Of a stretch of 64,000 bases of DNA, positions 54,332 to 64,000 are shown in pieces; the first letter of the stretch is position 1, and each line of letters begins with the position of its first letter. This DNA is from Monocercomonoides exilis PA203. Lineage: Eukaryota; Protista; Preaxostyla. The stretch lies in the NCBI GenBank assembly GCA_001643675.2, contig LSRY02000012.1:434001-498000 (forward strand). Reading direction: 5' to 3'. The notes below the pieces were generated by a model, which was given only the letters and a program-made list of their open reading frames with translations, ran no database searches and had not been told where the DNA came from. The position numbers and the translations under genes were made by a program.

Positions 54332-54582
54332 CAGATAAAAAATATGCAAATCAAATATTGTTGAGGATTTATTTATTTTACAAAACAACAAAATTATCTT
54401 TCATGTTTCTTTTCAAATGTGTTCCCAATTTCAAGAATCGCGTTTAAAAGATAAATCTTTAACCATTCACTTTCTTTCTTGCTTTCTTATAAAAACTCAG
54501 TGAAAAGCATTTGTTTGAATATCTTGATTCATTCACATAAAAAATGATCGCAACCATCATTAAATACTTTATTGACTTTTCT

Positions 54583-57040
54583 ATGCCTCCAAAGCCAAGC
54601 AATGTACAGAAACGATTTATGTCAAGTGCAGTTAATCTAGATGAAGATAGTGAAGAAGAGTCAGAGGATATTGGATCGGACAGCAGCGAAAATATTGAAA
54701 TAAGTGATAATGAAGAAGATGATATCGCTTATGATGATGAGGAGGAAGATAGCGAAGTGATCGATGAAGATGAAGGCGAAGATTTAAAAATCAACGATGA
54801 TGAAGTTGAAGATATCGTGACAAAAGCAATGGCTGAACTGACTATATCCGATCAAAAAGAAAAGAAAGCCAGAAAAGAAAGCGAGAAGATTTTCATCCCT
54901 GGAGATCCTCTGGAAGATGGAATGGTATGAATACAAATTTGTTTTGTTTGTTATTGTTTTTCTACGATCTTCTAGACATTGGACTATGAGCCAAAGGAAT
55001 TCGACATTATTCATTTTCTTGATTTGGATTGGCCAGCATTATCTTTTGATTATCTGCGAACGGGTCCGATTGCGCAACCTTTAGATAAAATAAAATATCC
55101 ATTGACATTATATGTTGCAATTGGAACTCAAGCTCAAAAAAAGAAAGATAACAGAATTAATTTACTTCAAGCAAAGCAATTGTGTAAAACAAAACATGAT
55201 CGTGATGATGAGGACGAAAGTGATGATGAAGATGATGACGATGACGATGACGATGACGACGAAGACGTTGATCCTATTTGCAGTGTATTTAGCATTCCTC
55301 ACTATGGCTCAGTGAATCGAGTTCGTTGTTTCCCATTTGATTCGACAAAATGTGTTGCGTGGTCAGAAGAGAAAATGCTTTCATTATATGATTTTCGACC
55401 AATGATGAGTTATTGGCAATCTCTGGATGAGGAAGAAGAGAAAATGAATGAAAAAGCAATTAAAGAGATGGAAAGCTCGGGAATTGGAAAGCCACCTGCT
55501 GGAAATCTTATGCCTTCTGCTCGAATTAAAGAAAAATTTGTCAGAAAGCCCAACGAAAGGGAAGTGAAACCGTTTGTTGTTTACAGAGGCCACTCGAACG
55601 AAGGATATGCTGTAGATTTTTCGACCTCAGATCAAATGAAGTATGATCATATCTGACTTAATGCCTAAAAGAAGAGCGCAATCACAAAATTAAAAGCAAA
55701 TTACATATAAAAATTATTTTTTTTCGATTAGACATTTTTCTTTATGAATTCGTTATTCACATTTACTTCTTTGTTTTATTATCATTTCGGCAAACTAATT
55801 ATTTTTTTTTCCTGTTATTTCTCAACAGTATTATTTCAGGTGATTGTGATGGAGACATTCACCTGTGGCATCCAACCTCTTCAATCGGCACTCCATCTTC
55901 CTCTTCAATGGGCTTTTCATCATCTTCTTCCTCCTCCTCCTCTTCTTCTTCTTCTTCTTCCTCTCTCTTCAACTACACCGTTCTGAAAGGCGCACATGGC
56001 TCGTCTGTAGAAGATGTGAAGTGGTCTCCCTTTGACCCAAATATCTTTATGTCTTGCTCTTCTGATGGGTCTATCAAAATATGGGACGTCAGAGAGGCAC
56101 AAGGCGCAGCATATGGGCAGAGCCGCGCGGCTGCTGGAGAAGGAAGACAGAGAGGAGTGGCTTTGTCTGTGTTCGATGCGCATTCACTGAACCCGTCGCC
56201 GTATCTTCAGAGCGGGTTCAGAGGAAGGAAGAGCGATGCTATCGACGTGAATGTGGTTGATTGGAACAAGTTTGGACTTTATTTACTTTTTACTAAATTG
56301 CATATTCATACTGATTACTTTTTCTTTATTTCGCTTTTGAATGCTTTTCATTGAAAAAAATCAAACACTAAACAAAAAATCTCTTCAATTTCACTTCCAT
56401 TGAACATTATCCCCTCTCAACTCTCCATTCAATCGTTATTCCCAACAGACATCACAGCAACTTGTTTGCCAGTGGAGGAGACGATGGCGTTGTGCGTGTT
56501 TGGGATGTGCGTACTCTGTCATCAGCACCTGCCTCTTCCTCATCTGCCTCCTCTGCCCAGTCAGCCGTCTCTGCTGTTTCTCCTTTCCTGCCTTCTTCTT
56601 CAGCCACTCCTCAGATGACATCATCATCATCATCCACATTCCGGTCTGATATGGTCATCAAGTGGCACAAGGCGCAGATCACTTCTGTCTCCTTCTCCTT
56701 CCACGACGAGACACTCATGCTCATTGCCGGCGCCGACGGGCAGATCAGCTGCTGGGACATCTCTATGCAGAAGGAGGTCGAAGGAATGGACGGGGAAGAA
56801 GAAGTGGCAATGACCAGGAAGCAGAAAAAGGATGCGAAGGAAAAGAAAATGGAGGCAGATGACGCAGCAACAGCAGCAGCGCCCTCACGTCTTGATGAAA
56901 TCCCAGTGACTTTCTTGAACACTCATCTTGGAGAGCCAAACCCGAAGGAGGCCCAATGGCATTCACAATACCCCGGATTGATCATGGGAGCAGGAGAACG
57001 ATTTCATATTTTCAAATTTGCAAATGTCACTTTCACTTAA
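54583..57040 (+). CDS. GRWD1: Glutamate-rich WD40 ribosome-assembly protein (GRWD1/Rrb1), 4 exons
   Basis: Acidic N-terminus, then LDYEP...LDWPALSFD...YPLTLYVAIGTQA...N.I...LCKT, HYGSVNRVR, GHSNEGYAVDFS, SVEDVKWSP, DVNVVDWN, ASGGDDG, WHKAQITSV and WHSQYPG. An alternative in-frame ATG lies at 54544. Confidence 0.9.
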
Positions 57041-57216: not shown

Positions 57217-58929
57217 ATGAATCCCATAACAGTTTTAATAATGTCCTTGAAGCAAATATCGGCTGCATATACCGCGGGAACCATGGCGGCTATTTCGCCA
57301 TGCGTTATAATTTTGGTTCCGATGTTATTGTCTAAAGTTAATGGCATGAAAGGGAAGAAGGCAATACAAATACCTCTGCTTTTATTAGGATTTTTGACGT
57401 GCTTCGTGATCATCGGCTTTTTCTTGAAGCAGTTGATGGAAAGCTCATTTCAAAGCGGTTTTAGACTCGGACTTGGACTGATATTTGTTGCACTAGGATG
57501 CCAAAGTTTCTTTGGCAAAGTTGGGTCATTGACTTTTCCTCTTTTTGATAATCCTTTTCTCATGGGTGGTGTATTTGCAGTTCTGGTGTGCATTACAGTT
57601 TTTCATTAGTACTATCTTTTTCAATTTATTTTGCTTTTATTCCCGCTTCCTTTTATAATTCTATTGATAAAAATCTCAAGGTTTCATATAACCCCTGCAC
57701 TATTCCATACCTTGGAATGCTCGTATCTTTATTTGCTGGTCCAACTTTAATCCCAATGATGTTGGTGTTTGCATTTGGGATGATAACCCCATCTTTTCTT
57801 TTTGCTCTTTTTGGATCAGGAATTCTTAACTATATTCAAAACAAAACATCAGGAGCATTTCATTGGATTAACAAAGTCATGGCCCTTGTAAATATTGGAT
57901 CAGGATTATATTTATCTTTTTCAATACATTCTTTAACATATGTTGACATTGCTGTTGCTGGTGTTTTACTTGCTGCTTCTTTTGGCCTTCTTTTCAGGGT
58001 TTGTTCAATATCGCAAAAAAGTTTTTATTATTTAAACAATTGACTGTGCCCATTTAATATTTATAGAGCTACTTCAGGAAGGAAAATCTTCTCCCAAGGA
58101 AAAAAGTGTCTTCGGAACCATTGCCTGAACTGAGCGAATACGAAAAGAAAGAGAGAAGAAATACAATGCTCATTGTTATTATTTTTACTTTGCTTGTTGG
58201 CTTGGCTTGCGCAGTCTCTGTAATGGGTGTTTGCAAAAGAGATGACTGGTTTATGAGCAAGGAAGAAAAAGAACTCATGGTTTGAATATTCAACTGCCAT
58301 TTTTATTTTAACATTATTCGTTTTGCAATTATTTGTAATCTTATTGTGTTTTCTAGGAATTTGTCAAATCACAAGCAGCAGAGAGAGAGGCCAATAAAGA
58401 GAACGACGAAGAGGATGATATCAAAGATGATGATGATGAAGGACCTACAGACGATGACTCTGAAGACAGTTTATCGGAAATTAACGAAGACGAGGAGGAT
58501 TCGAGTGCCAGTTCTGAAAGTAAAGAAAAAGACGACGAAGAGAAAGAGAAGGAAATGCCTTCAGCACTTCCATGCAAAGTGCTCCCACCGTGCCCTCAGT
58601 GCAAGCTGTGCTTCATTGCATTTTTAGTTGCCTTCTGCACGGGATTTGGCTCGACTCTGCTGTTGGCCACGAAGAAAGAAGACTTTTCGGGTGTTGTGGG
58701 CGATGTGTGCACCGTCCCGAAGTTCCGCAGAGCAGCTGCGCCAAAGCCGCAACAGAAGCAGCCGGAGAAATCTTCTGCTCCAGCAGCGAAAGAAGCGAAG
58801 GCAGCGCCTGTGGTTGTTGCTCAGGTGGAGCAAGTGAAGGAGACGGGTGCTGAAAAGAAAGCAGAGGCAAAAGCAGGAAAGGGGAAATCGAAAAGCACTT
58901 CATCGGAAAAGAAGCAGAAGAGTAAGTAA
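57217..58929 (+). CDS. CcdA/DsbD-beta-like transmembrane disulfide-reductant transporter with a C-terminal extension (~490 aa, 4 exons)
   Basis: Exons 57217-57585, 57681-57998, 58067-58279 and 58357-58929 are joined by phase-0 GT-AG introns. The two pseudo-symmetric Pro-Cys boxes are AYTAGTMAAISPCVIILVP and FLMGGVFAVLVSYNPCTIPYL, followed by FAFGMITP and WINKVMALVNIGSGLYL, as in 6-TM CcdA. Confidence 0.82.
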
Positions 58930-59944
58930 GAAAATTTATAGAAAGCAATCAGAAGATGACATTTTGTTAATTATACTCATTCTGGTTGTTTTTTCAGCAG
59001 AAATTGAGTTTTGAAAACAAAAATTTTCTCTGAAATTTGAATTAATAGGAAAGTTACTTGTTTTTTCTATTCTTTTGCTTTCTTTGTTGTTTTGTTTTTA
59101 TTTTATAGTACTTCTTTTATCCACTTTATTGCGTCTTGACACTTCTCTTCTATTTTGCACTTGTGCATAATTGCAGAGAATAATACTAAGTATTGCGTGT
59201 TATCATGAATCACAATTGGAAGATTAAAGATAGTGAAAAAAATGAATGGATTAATAATGAAATCATAACTATCACGAAATAAACAAAAAGAGAAGGGCTA
59301 AGAGGAAACTGCAATACTAAGCAATTGTTGAATGGCAACAATAAAAAAGAAATGGTGAAAGCAAACAAAAAATTATTGAAAAAAAAGAGCGTTTTAAATA
59401 AACAAGGAGAAAAAAGAGAATTCATTGAATCATTTTGGGGTAAAATGAAAAGTTATAACAATAAAACATTTTTTTTCTGCGGTCTTTATCAAAAAAATAA
59501 TAAAACACTTTGTGATGAAACAGGCAAAATAGCAATGGATCAGAAAAAATGAACTGTTCAATCAAGCAACCAAAGAAAGAGAGAAAGAAAAGATAAAAAC
59601 TTAGTCTGAACTCTAAGAGATTAACAGTATCAACATGTGAAATGAAGCGTTGCTTGATTGAGATAATTTCAATGCAAAAGATAAACACGGTGAAAGAACA
59701 GCTTTCAAAAACACTACGCGAATGAAAGGACTTTATTTTTCAAACAGAGAAATAAGATTGAAATTACACAAGTGGAAGTGATAAAAAGTAACACATATTT
59801 GGTACTAATGCACACACGCTCGAACTCAAATAAATTATATAACAGAAAAAAAAAGAGAGAGATAAGAAGGAGAATGAAAGAAAAAGAGAAAGAAAAAGAC
59901 GATTCTATTTGCATTTCCCATTCCAACAATATCACACACCATCA

Positions 59945-62900
59945 TTAAACATGAGGAATAAACGATCCTTGGTTCTGCCACATCTCCATCATCATCAGCC
60001 ACTGCTGCGGATCAGCCATCGCAAACCCGTCCCCCATCGGCAGACTGGGGCAGAACTGTGCTGTATGGCCCAGCTGCCCACACAGAGTGCACTGCACAGG
60101 CACAAAAGGCATGCCCATCGGTAGCATTGCTCCGTGTGAGGGGCTGCTGTTGCTGTTGTATCCACCTTTGTGGTGATGATGGTAGGAGTGTTGTTGATTC
60201 TGCTTGTTGGGCGATGTTTCTACTTTGCCTTTTGTGAGTGTGGTTTTATCTTCAGCGGAATTTTCCGATTTTTGTTTGTTTTGTTCTTTGTTGCTATTTT
60301 GCAGTGCAGAGGCCTTTGAAGAATCATTCTTCTCCTTCCCAGAACCTGTTTTTTCTGTCGCATGCTCGTTTTCCTTTTTTTTCTTTCCTTCTCTTTCATC
60401 GTTCTTCACTCCTTGCTGGCTTTCATCATTTGGTTTTTTGCTTAAATCTGTTGTTTTTTGATTGTCTTTATTTCTTTCGTCTGCATCGTTCGTTTTTTCT
60501 TTTATTGTATTTCCTGTTTCTTCCTCTTTCTTTTCAGTACCTCTATCAGTTTTTTCCTGTTCTTTACTCTCTGATTCCTTCTCGTTAGCGCAAATTTCCT
60601 CTTCTTTTCCCTTTTCTTTTCCTCCCTCTCCCTCCTTCTGTTTTTGCGCATCTTCCTTTGTTTCTCCCTTTTTCCCTGTTTTGTTCTTCCACATCGGACA
60701 CTTTGAAGAAGAATGCTCCGTAGAGCTACAAAACGCACAGCGGTTGTTCTTTCTCAGAAACGGCATTGGCGATCCAGGAAACGGGAAAGGCGCAAAATAC
60801 TCCATCGGATCAGGCTCAAAAGGCGGGATTCCCATTGGCATGAAGGGCATCCCAGTCATTCCATTCATTCCAGACATCATCATCTCCATCTGCTCAGGCG
60901 AGAAATCATCTCCTTTCCCCATCTGCATCGAGTCTGCTCCTTCCTCCTCTGCACTTTTTGTATAGTCTGTAGGAAGCTCCATCGGAAGAGGCATGCCCTG
61001 AAGAGGAGCTTGAGGCATATCTCCCATCAGCGGCGGCTGAGGATAAGGAAACTCTGGCTGCATGAACATTGCTCCTCCAGCCGGGTATGAATCAGTTGTG
61101 CTGTGATGTTGCGGATTGTGATATGGTGCTTGCTGTGAGTGATGGTGAGCAGTCACAAAAATAGTATTATTCTGTCCATTAAACTGTTCTGCCTTTGCAT
61201 TTCTGTCAAACACTTGTTCTGATTTCGAATGGCTTGAATGCTTCTTTTTGTCCTTTGTATTTTCTTCGAGATTCAGTCGAACATGGTGATGTGGCTGGCT
61301 CTGCTGTGATGAATGCTGATAAGGCTGTGCAGATGGTTGATTATGTTTGTGCTTCTGACTTTCGTTTTCCTGTGGAGAAAGCTTCAGTGTTTGGAAAGTT
61401 ATCTGCTCAGGCTGAAACACACCAATTGGACTAAGACTCTTTTTGGAGATGAACGGCTTCTCTTCATTCGGTTGTAAGTTATCATTTGTTGTCTTTATTT
61501 CGGATGCTGCGGACTTCTGCAATTCCTGTTGAATTTCAAGTGTGTTTATTCCTGAGCCCAAAGAAAGCGGAGATACTGACTGTGATGAACCCTTCTTCTT
61601 CTGGTGCGGGCGGTACATCACATGGAACAGCGGATCCTCTTCAAATGATTCGCTTTTCTCTGAAGAAGAAGAAGCAGACGTTGCTGAGAGTGCATTCTGA
61701 CTGTAATCAGCTGGATTTGGAATTTGTGGAGGAGGAGGTGGTGGTGGCGGTGGGGCATGATCCTGCTTCTTACTACCTTCTTTTGTGTTGAACGACTTCT
61801 GTGAGAATATCGATCTGACAGCAGAAGACGAATGCTGATTGTCACGATGCGTTCCGCGCCCAGATCTTGTTCCACCGCGGAATGCGCCTCTGCTTCTTTG
61901 AGCCGTTGGAAAGATACTTGAGTCATTAAACTCACTTTGAAAGTTTTGAATCTTCTCCTTTGTATTCTGTTTGTTTTGTGGGATTTGGTGTGGCTGCCTG
62001 CGCGAATATGGCGGCTGGCGTGGCGCTGTCCTGCTTCCATAGCTTTGTGCTGTCTTTGTTGTTGGTATCGATGATGAATGGTTTGTTGCTGCAGAAGTGC
62101 GAGAAAACGGAGCATTTCTTGTAGGCAATTCAAATAATGGCTTTTTTATAACACTTGTCTGCGATTCAACAGTTGGTACAGATGCAGACGCTGCTGAAGA
62201 GCCAGGAAAGCGGGGATTGCGCTGAAAGCCTTCGGCAGCCTTCACTTGTGCAGAGGTCATGAAAAGAGGCACAGTCGAAGAAGATGCCTGGTTTGCTGGG
62301 GCAGAGTAAGGCGGATAGTTGTAGCCATTGTGAATAGGAGGAGGGTAATATGACTGGGGTGCCTGTGCAGCGGGGGAATAAGGAGGGTACTGTGGATAAG
62401 GTGCGTATGGATACATTGAGTTAGGCGGCTGAACTGCTGGTTGGGCACGAAGAGCCTTTGGTATTGACAACGTAGGAACGCTGTTGGATGTGGCAGGGGG
62501 TGGAATTGTAGTGTCGAGTCTGGGGATTGACGAAGCTGTTGATGGGGCATAAGGAAAATAGCTGTCGGAATTCAAATTTGCAGCTGAATTTGACGTGTGT
62601 GAAGAATGTTGTGAAGTGGAGGGATCAAAAGACCCAGTCAGCAGAGCAGAGGCACTAAGTTCTGCAATTGGCATAGAATTGACTGGAGCGTGTTTCTTTT
62701 TTGGAGGAGAGAAAGGCACAGCCGATATCGCCTGCACATCCAGCTCGACTTCTGCCTTCTCGACATCCGGCGGAGTTGGAGGCAGAGACGGAAGAGTCTC
62801 CTCCTCATCAGATTTCTTCTGTTGCATCTTTTTCTTTTTCTTTTTGTGCACCAGCTGCCTGGCGATCCTGTCGAGCGAAGAGTCATCGCACTGTGAGGGC

Positions 62901-64000
62901 AGCACGACAGACATGTCAGAGATCGACAGATGCGTCAGCACGCTAACTGGCGTCTGAGGCATCGATAGAGAAGAAGGAGGCCCCGTCAATGAGACGCTGG
63001 ATGAATAAGACCGCGATGAGTACACAGACGACGAATCAGAGCTTTCGGTGGTTAGTGCTCCTGCGCCTGTGCTTGCCCCTGCCCCTATTCCTGTTCCTGC
63101 TCCTATAGTTGGTGTGTATTCAGAATCTGTGGATGATAATGAGCTCACAGAGTATGTCTTTCGTAGGTTGTGCCTGCCTTTATCTGGGCGATAATTCTCT
63201 CTTGAGGTGGATGAAAGTCTTTTTGCATAAGCTAGTTTCTTCTTCTTTTTCTTCTTTTTCTTCTTTCCTTTCTTTCCTTTTGATTTTTCTTCTTGATTAT
63301 CTTCATCAAAGCAAACACTTCCAGAATTCTTTTTCTTTTTCTTTTTCTTTCTAACTTTTTCACCATTTTGCAATTCATCTTGTTGCTTACTAACAAATAA
63401 ACCCGTACTGTCAGTTATATCTGTATCAGAGGGCAAAAGAAAAGGAGAAATCGATATAATCTCTGATGATATTGGAGATGACATTGATGGAGAAGGAGTC
63501 TCACGAGTTAGACCTGGAGGTGGGTGTAATGAAGATAAAGATGATGTTTCATCATCGATTAAAGGTTGAACATTATGCAAAGGAATAGGCGGCAAATCAG
63601 GAAAAGTATTCACGCTGTTGGAAGAAGCCTTTTCAGGCAATAAATTTTCCAAAGCTCCTAAAAATTTTGTACCTTCACATAAAATTAGATCTGATGTATG
63701 AAATTGCAAACTTTGATTAGAAATATTGTCGTTGATTAATCCAGTTGAGCTGTTATATGAAGAAGAACGTTTGACTGCTTCAAGCAGTAACGTTTCAATT
63801 GGTTTTTCAACTTCTTAATTTTCATAATATTTGATAACAAAGAAAAAATATGTGTTAAAAATATAGAGCACAAACACGAAACAATAATTAAAAATGCATA
63901 CGAGTAGTTTCCATTTGATGACCTTCTGTGGCAGTTTTCTCCAATGAAATATTATCTGGATTAAAATTCACTATAAAAAATTTTTTCATTGTTCGTTTCA
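59945..64000 (-). CDS. Large low-complexity protein with two CCHC zinc knuckles (5'-truncated)
   Basis: The long exon spans ~63815-59945, with a further exon at ~63902-63955, and the gene probably continues past the window edge. CAFCSSTEHSSSKC and CTLCGQLGHTAQFC fit C-x2-C-x4-H-x4-C. Poly-Lys tracts and an RG-rich patch (RGAFRGGTRSGRG) are present. Confidence 0.8.

What the first reader, a model, noticed from the sequence alone, without database searches (positions are those of the whole stretch)
57217..58929. Intron-containing CcdA/DsbD-type electron transporter with a KxKxx tail: a candidate cytosol-to-ER reducing pathway
Seen: a 4-exon gene whose first ~210 aa carry both CcdA/DsbD-beta redox cysteines (SPC at 57301, NPC at 57696) in the expected hydrophobic pattern; the protein ends ...EKKQKSK*, with Lys at -3 and -5. 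Established: CcdA/DsbD-beta carries electrons from cytosolic thioredoxin across prokaryotic and thylakoid membranes, and eukaryotic copies are best known from plastids. KxKxx is a COPI ER-retrieval signal, and the membrane step bringing cytosolic reductant into the ER lumen is poorly defined. Inference: in a host that probably lacks mitochondria, plastids and cytochrome c, this prokaryote-type transporter may have been repurposed to supply reductant to the ER. That would suit the very Cys-rich surface proteins also encoded here.
Basis: partly seen in the sequence, partly recalled or inferred. Interest (0 to 1): 0.88.

Follow-up and report, generated by a model that had tools for sequence, protein, structure and literature searches.

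The report
Nine-helix CcdA-like disulfide carrier, oxymonad
A protist without mitochondria makes a spliced membrane protein related to the bacterial carriers that move reducing power across membranes; it belongs to an undescribed subfamily also found in tiny archaea and in oxygen-using protists, and it probably reduces disulfides inside the secretory pathway, but its location and direction are untested.

Summary
The gene is real. It is MONOS_632 of Monocercomonoides exilis, with four exons; all three introns appear in RNA contigs. Pfam misses it, but its family profile matches Thermus CcdA (5VKV, E=3.6e-14) with both Pro-Cys motifs aligned and essentially invariant. It is not a classic CcdA: three extra helices carry a conserved C..CxxCxxC cluster on the predicted non-cytosolic side. 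This nine-helix subfamily forms its own clade (100/100) in DPANN archaea, CPR bacteria and one eukaryotic clade (93/92). That clade includes aerobic protists with mitochondria (Thecamonas, Paulinella), so it is not an adaptation to losing mitochondria. The KxKxx tail is present but uninformative: the paralog lacks it, only 2/18 eukaryotic members have a dilysine tail, and 20/83 prokaryotic members do. Best reading (0.6): thioredoxin-driven export of electrons to the lumen or cell surface through a built-in cysteine relay; ER specifically about 0.4. Running in reverse as an oxidant is not excluded, but an early VKOR anti-correlation faded (p=0.13). I found no paper describing the subfamily. This scan found it before on the intronless paralog (s1-471177).

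The parts
57217..57585 (+). Exon 1: helices 1-3 and start of helix 4 of the CcdA-like core; first Pro-Cys motif (Cys codon 57301). Probable start Met at 57241.
   Evidence: hhalign of this exon to classic CcdA 93.7%, E=1.9e-7; ESM Atlas CcdA/DsbD_TM 0.95
57586..57680 (+). Intron 1, 95 nt, GT-AG, phase 0
   Evidence: 4 RNA runs; paralog is continuous here
57681..57998 (+). Exon 2: second Pro-Cys motif (Cys codon 57696), helices 4-6 and extra helix 7
57999..58066 (+). Intron 2, 68 nt, GT-AG
58067..58279 (+). Exon 3: basic cytosolic loop, helix 8, and a Cys at its outer end (58232) that co-varies with the last Cys of the cluster
58280..58356 (+). Intron 3, 77 nt, GT-AG
58357..58572 (+). Acidic low-complexity linker, predicted non-cytosolic and disordered
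   Evidence: 38 D/E in the helix 8-9 loop; pLDDT below 50
58573..58611 (+). Conserved C-x5-CxxCxxC cluster at the outer start of helix 9 (codons 58573, 58591, 58600, 58609)
   Evidence: first Cys 101/101 aligned members; CxxC 91/99 and 93/99; last Cys 80/98
58612..58737 (+). Helix 9, then a short cytosolic motif with a Cys (58708) shared by all four oxymonad proteins
58738..58929 (+). Lys/Ala-rich tail ending KxKxx; not conserved

Best explanation
A nine-helix member of the DsbD/CcdA superfamily that carries disulfide-reducing equivalents from cytosolic thioredoxin across a secretory-pathway membrane. Shown: homology, the invariant membrane Pro-Cys pair, the conserved extra Cys cluster, expression, and presence of cytosolic WCGPC thioredoxins and thioredoxin reductase in the host. 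Inferred from charge alternation: the cluster faces the lumen or outside and the C-terminus is cytosolic. Inferred by analogy with CcdA: thioredoxin reduces the membrane disulfide, which then faces outward and reduces the built-in relay. In that relay an invariant loop Cys and a CxxC at the start of helix 9 replace the thioredoxin-fold partner, and the two remaining Cys form a structural bond tying helices 8 and 9. The relay would then reduce PDI-like or surface proteins. ER specifically about 0.4; Golgi, endosome or plasma membrane about 0.2.
For: Family profile vs 5VKV E=3.6e-14 with both motifs aligned; hhalign vs classic CcdA 99.1%; 18/57 members hit PF02683; Atlas structure search returns DsbD/CcdA clusters first, TM 0.51-0.56. 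Pro-Cys Cys 100/101 and 102/102. K/R-rich loops alternate as expected. Outer Cys pair co-lost, Fisher p=6e-5 on related sequences. Signal-less thioredoxin or MsrA genes lie next to the gene in about four independent prokaryotic lineages. Archaeal carriers keep TrxB-like genes 5/5, 3 over the cut-off. The host has TrxR, Trx and PDI-like proteins. Eukaryotic members start at helix 1 with no transit peptide.
Against: No localisation, partner or direction has been measured. The only ER marker is uninformative. The structural match to the NMR structure is modest (Foldseek E=0.72, prob 0.84; VIA Z 4.7-6.9). The prokaryotic redox neighbours are cytosolic, and no exported acceptor is linked. Most prokaryotic loci have no redox neighbour.
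Confidence: 0.6

Rival explanations
1. Same chemistry, opposite direction: the protein removes electrons from lumenal dithiols and passes them to oxidised cytosolic thioredoxin, forming disulfides without oxygen or quinone.
For: No Ero1, Erv/QSOX or VKOR found in the host (the Ero1 and Erv controls are uninformative) despite many PDI-like proteins. A CxxC at the outer start of a membrane helix recalls DsbB/VKOR (own knowledge). Neighbouring MsrA is a cytosolic electron sink. VKOR found in 0/10 carriers in the first sample.
Against: Within the right order, VKOR is in 1/14 carriers vs 111/387 others, p=0.13; pooled 3/18, p=0.42. Carriers and host keep thioredoxin reductase, which holds thioredoxin reduced. 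All characterised superfamily members export electrons (PMC3322552). Aerobic protists also carry the gene.
Confidence: 0.13
2. The outer cysteines bind a metal or metalloid (Cu, Zn, As, Hg), and the protein is a metal-thiol transporter, reductase or redox sensor rather than a general disulfide reductase.
For: After the co-varying pair is removed, three cysteines remain, an odd number; His precedes the helix-8 Cys in 46/67 DPANN-type members. One CPR locus has a heavy-metal ATPase and a cupredoxin nearby.
Against: The His is lost in oxymonads. The CxxC is lost in six CPR members while the loop Cys stays, which suits a nucleophile more than a metal site. No consistent metal-resistance neighbours.
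Confidence: 0.12
3. The core is a redox carrier, but in this host it serves one dedicated client (for example a lumenal or surface peroxiredoxin or Msr), with the outer cysteines purely structural.
For: Up to five outer Cys could form two structural disulfides; ScsB and CcdA feed envelope peroxiredoxins and Msr (PMC3322552).
Against: The loop Cys is invariant even when its possible partners are lost.
Confidence: 0.11
4. An ordinary cytochrome c biogenesis or plastid CcdA, a bacterial contaminant, or a non-redox LysE-superfamily transporter.
For: Automatic names call relatives 'cytochrome c biogenesis protein'.
Against: Spliced, expressed and conserved across Preaxostyla. No CcsA/CcmC/CcmF in the host or in 11 archaeal carriers, with controls positive. 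Cysteines invariant. Long 100/100 branch from classic CcdA.
Confidence: 0.04

Closest known systems
CcdA (PF02683; Thermus thermophilus CcdA, PDB 5VKV)
   Same: Six-helix core with two Pro-Cys motifs in equivalent places.
   Different: Three more helices and a tethered Cys cluster; window protein not detected by PF02683; separate clade. Classic DPANN ccdA genes sit beside exported thioredoxins (14/20 loci); this family does not.
DsbD and ScsB (eight-helix beta domain plus alpha and gamma domains; PMC3322552)
   Same: Extra helices after the core bring a C-terminal redox module to the outer side (inferred).
   Different: No alpha domain and no thioredoxin-fold gamma domain; the module is a short Cys cluster anchored by a ninth helix, with no Pfam or PDB match.
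Plastid CcdA (thylakoid)
   Same: A eukaryotic, nuclear-encoded CcdA homologue.
   Different: No transit peptide, host has no plastid, and nearest relatives are DPANN/CPR proteins. Plastid sequences were not in my tree.
Unidentified mammalian ER membrane reductant carrier (PMC7197872; review PMC12781119, LMF1 as candidate)
   Same: The proposed job: cytosolic thioredoxin to lumenal disulfides.
   Different: No named animal, fungal or land-plant member appeared in my searches, so this cannot be claimed as the mammalian protein.
VKOR / DsbB
   Same: A CxxC at the outer start of a membrane helix with a loop Cys nearby (resemblance from memory).
   Different: No sequence or fold match.

Membership tests
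DsbD/CcdA superfamily | Sequence homology of the membrane domain | tested here: met
   E=3.6e-14; 99.1%
DsbD/CcdA superfamily | Two similarly placed redox Cys in Pro-Cys motifs of helices 1 and 4 | tested here: met
   100/101 and 102/102; aligned to 5VKV
DsbD/CcdA superfamily | CcdA-type fold | tested here: inconclusive
   5VKV aligns over 169-200 residues but Z 4.7-6.9 and E=0.72; Atlas top five rows are DsbD/CcdA clusters
DsbD/CcdA superfamily | Electron transfer from cytosolic thioredoxin to an extracytoplasmic acceptor | not testable with these tools
   Donor system present in host; activity unmeasured
CcdA class | Consists only of the membrane-embedded domain | tested here: not met
   Nine helices plus Cys cluster
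CcdA class | PF02683 above its gathering cut-off; clusters with classic CcdA | tested here: not met
   separate clade 100/100
DsbD or ScsB class | N-terminal alpha domain and thioredoxin-fold gamma domain | tested here: not met
   Protein starts at helix 1; no Pfam/NCBIfam thioredoxin hit
Cytochrome c maturation system I/II | Co-occurring heme-handling CcsA/CcmC/CcmF | tested here: not met
   (controls ring in 9-10 of 14 genomes)
COPI-retrieved ER membrane protein | Cytosolic C-terminal KKxx/KxKxx | tested here: met
   Motif present; predicted cytosolic
COPI-retrieved ER membrane protein | Motif conserved in homologues or above chance | tested here: not met
   2/18 eukaryotic vs 20/83 prokaryotic; chance about 0.26 from tail composition
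COPI-retrieved ER membrane protein | ER localisation | not testable with these tools
   needs imaging
Non-redox LysE/NicO/SfLAP relatives | Cysteines not conserved; better match to these families | tested here: not met
   Cys invariant; best profile hits are CcdA/DsbD

The most novel reading that the evidence does not exclude
An old, unrecognised eukaryotic family of DsbD-type carriers, related to DPANN proteins, works in the ER membrane; in this anaerobe, where no Ero1, Erv/QSOX or VKOR was found, it runs in reverse and forms secretory disulfides without oxygen by passing electrons to cytosolic thioredoxin.
Probability: 0.12. Interest if true: 0.9.

Novelty: new variant of a known kind. Interest (0 to 1): 0.64.

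Why it matters
A 2025 review (PMC12781119) still lists the ER membrane protein that links cytosolic thioredoxin to the lumen as unknown and expects something DsbD-like. Here is a DsbD/CcdA homologue in eukaryotes with no plastid targeting, kept in metamonads, an apusomonad and a cercozoan. It can be tested directly in E. coli dsb mutants, yeast microsomes or liposomes. It also suggests a fourth architecture in the superfamily, with a miniature Cys relay in place of a thioredoxin domain. Limits: it was not found in animals, fungi or plants, so it does not solve the mammalian question, and function is inferred only.

Tried and rejected
Pfam and NCBIfam on each exon and on the paralog gave no DsbD hit; only family profiles reach CcdA. 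KxKxx as ER evidence: rejected (I first binned two CPR-type proteins, P0114 and P0115, as eukaryotic, and the corrected counts are 2/18 and 20/83). Electron import because TrxB is missing: rejected. Mutual exclusion with VKOR: striking at phylum level (0/10 vs 108/241, p=0.006), but not significant within the order. Transfer from inside DPANN: the free tree nests eukaryotes there, but DPANN monophyly is not rejected (AU p=0.36). No relatives in viral contigs. The C-terminal extension has no Pfam, PDB or Atlas match. Literature searches found no description of the family; the library omits most subscription journals, and one review (PMC7485265) was not held. I searched exon by exon by reference and otherwise used the tool-supplied database protein P0082 (which lacks the first 14-22 residues) and the intronless paralog.

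Full report
Host and gene. The genome has 82.3 Mb in 101 contigs, the Monocercomonoides exilis assembly (PMC8767320), and the database names the gene MONOS_632. Three-frame translation gives four exons, 57217-57585, 57681-57998, 58067-58279 and 58357-58929, separated by phase-0 GT-AG introns. RNA contigs from four runs of one study skip exactly 95, 68 and 77 nt at these places. They begin at 57242-57246, and the Blattamonas orthologue starts at the equivalent of the Met at 57241, so that Met is the likelier start. The genome holds one intronless paralog on contig 8, which this scan examined before (s1-471177). I did not send any joined spliced sequence of my own to a search tool; I used exon references, the paralog and the tool-supplied protein P0082.

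Homology. Pfam and NCBIfam do not call DsbD on the exons or the paralog. Exon 1 finds 80 relatives among cluster representatives. A profile of these matches Thermus CcdA (5VKV) at E=3.6e-14 with both Pro-Cys motifs aligned, and matches classic DPANN CcdA at 99.1% by hhalign. Exon 1 alone gives 93.7%. Eighteen of 57 members hit PF02683 at E up to 0.1. Predicted models have pLDDT 74 and 87. They align with 5VKV over 169-200 residues, but only at Z 4.7-6.9, while the Atlas shape search lists DsbD/CcdA clusters first. The case for homology rests on sequence; the fold result is compatible but not decisive.

After the six-helix core come helices 7 and 8, a linker, a Cys cluster and helix 9. In about 100 members the two core Cys are present in 100/101 and 102/102, the loop Cys in 101/101, the CxxC in 91/99 and 93/99, and the last Cys in 80/98. 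The last Cys and a Cys at the end of helix 8 are kept or lost together (p=6e-5 on non-independent sequences), as expected for a structural disulfide. The CxxC is lost as a pair in six CPR members that keep the loop Cys. Loops 1-2, 3-4, 5-6, 7-8 and the tail are K/R-rich, while the others are neutral or acidic. By the positive-inside rule the cluster is non-cytosolic and the C-terminus cytosolic (inference). The extension matches nothing in Pfam, PDB or the Atlas. By the class definitions in PMC3322552, CcdA is the membrane domain alone, and DsbD and ScsB have alpha and gamma domains; this protein fits none of the three.

Distribution. Named members come from Woesearchaeota/Nanobdellota, Micrarchaeota, Dojkabacteria and Doudnabacteria, and from Blattamonas (2), Paratrimastix, Paulinella micropora and Thecamonas trahens. 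Unnamed members sit on eukaryotic contigs beside Tom22-like or complex I genes. The family is patchy: 10 of 251 sampled Nanobdellota genomes. In a mixture-model tree it is separated from classic CcdA by a long 100/100 branch, and the 19 eukaryotic sequences form one clade (93/92), with Preaxostyla sister to the rest. The free tree places eukaryotes among DPANN-type sequences, but DPANN monophyly is not rejected (p-AU 0.36), so donor and direction are open. The group labels for unnamed sequences are my inference from motifs and context. Asgard archaea and plastid CcdA were not tested. Since aerobic protists with mitochondria carry it, the gene is not a response to losing mitochondria.

The tail. 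KxKxx is present and predicted cytosolic, so it could act. But the paralog lacks it, the Blattamonas orthologue has only RxKxx, and strict dilysine tails occur in 2/18 eukaryotic and 20/83 prokaryotic members. Tail composition alone gives a chance of about 0.26. Some eukaryotic C-termini from metagenomes may be miscalled. The better argument for the secretory pathway is that eukaryotic members begin directly at helix 1 with no transit peptide.

Context. Neither the host nor 11 archaeal carriers have CcsA/CcmC/CcmF-type genes. The host has two thioredoxin reductase genes with an in-frame TGA, WCGPC thioredoxins and many PDI-like proteins, so donor and acceptor candidates exist. In prokaryotes the gene adjoins a signal-less CPHC thioredoxin in six genomes (two lineages) and a cytosolic MsrA at three loci (two lineages); most other loci show no redox neighbour. 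Classic ccdA in the same phylum adjoins exported thioredoxins in 14 of 20 loci. This contrast fits a protein that carries its own outer acceptor.

Direction. I considered reverse flow because Ero1, Erv/QSOX and VKOR were not found in the host (only the VKOR control is informative). Carriers first appeared to lack VKOR (0/10 vs 108/241). With the order as the comparison group and more carriers, the effect was not significant (1/14 vs 111/387, p=0.13; pooled p=0.42), and carriers keep TrxB-like genes. Forward transfer, as in every characterised member, remains the best reading (0.6); reverse is 0.13.

Verdict. This is a new architectural variant of the DsbD/CcdA superfamily with a non-plastid eukaryotic branch. 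I found no paper on it in the held library, though databases auto-annotate some members as cytochrome c biogenesis proteins. The ER carrier question is still described as open (PMC7197872, PMC12781119), and this protein makes a DsbD-type answer testable in protists, but nothing here shows ER location or activity. Interest 0.64.

Noticed in passing
L004:3832-5817 (-) = G000 contig 8: Intronless paralog of 661 aa. Its database model (MONOS_4215, 581 aa) starts 80 residues late and omits the first catalytic Cys; MONOS_632 is also N-truncated.
   Followed up: yes
window 58669-58737: A short cytosolic motif after helix 9, containing a Cys, is conserved in all four oxymonad proteins but not in other members; it could be a sorting signal or an extra thiol.
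   Followed up: no
window 54544-57040 (+): Multi-exon WD40 gene with a CAF1C_H4-bd domain (GRWD1/Rrb1-like by inference) ends 177 nt upstream of the finding.
   Followed up: partly
window 59945-63709 (-): 1254-aa low-complexity ORF with two CCHC-like knuckles; RNA contigs from 59199-59204 onward abut the 3' end of the finding's transcript.
   Followed up: no
G000:C23:567112-568572 and C49:577020-578480: Two near-identical large thioredoxin reductase genes, each with one in-frame TGA (likely selenocysteine).
   Followed up: partly
L055, L059, L061, L062: PDI-like proteins with unusual active sites (CHKC, CEKC, CDKC) and HDEL-like tails; candidate lumenal partners.
   Followed up: no
G000 whole genome: No Ero1, Erv/QSOX or VKOR detected despite about 45 thioredoxin-fold matches; how this anaerobe oxidises its PDIs is unexplained (controls weak).
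   Followed up: partly
P0136 (Thecamonas trahens AMSG_12154): The family member is joined to an MFS transporter in an 835-aa model; possibly two genes merged by the annotation.
   Followed up: no
Nanobdellota sample: VKOR homologues occur in 43% of sampled Nanobdellota genomes (28% in the order of G004), archaea not thought to make quinones.
   Followed up: no
L011, L018: Records titled 'uncultured Methanosarcinales' fall among the order of a Woesearchaeota genome in this collection (G148, G256); the titles look wrong.
   Followed up: no
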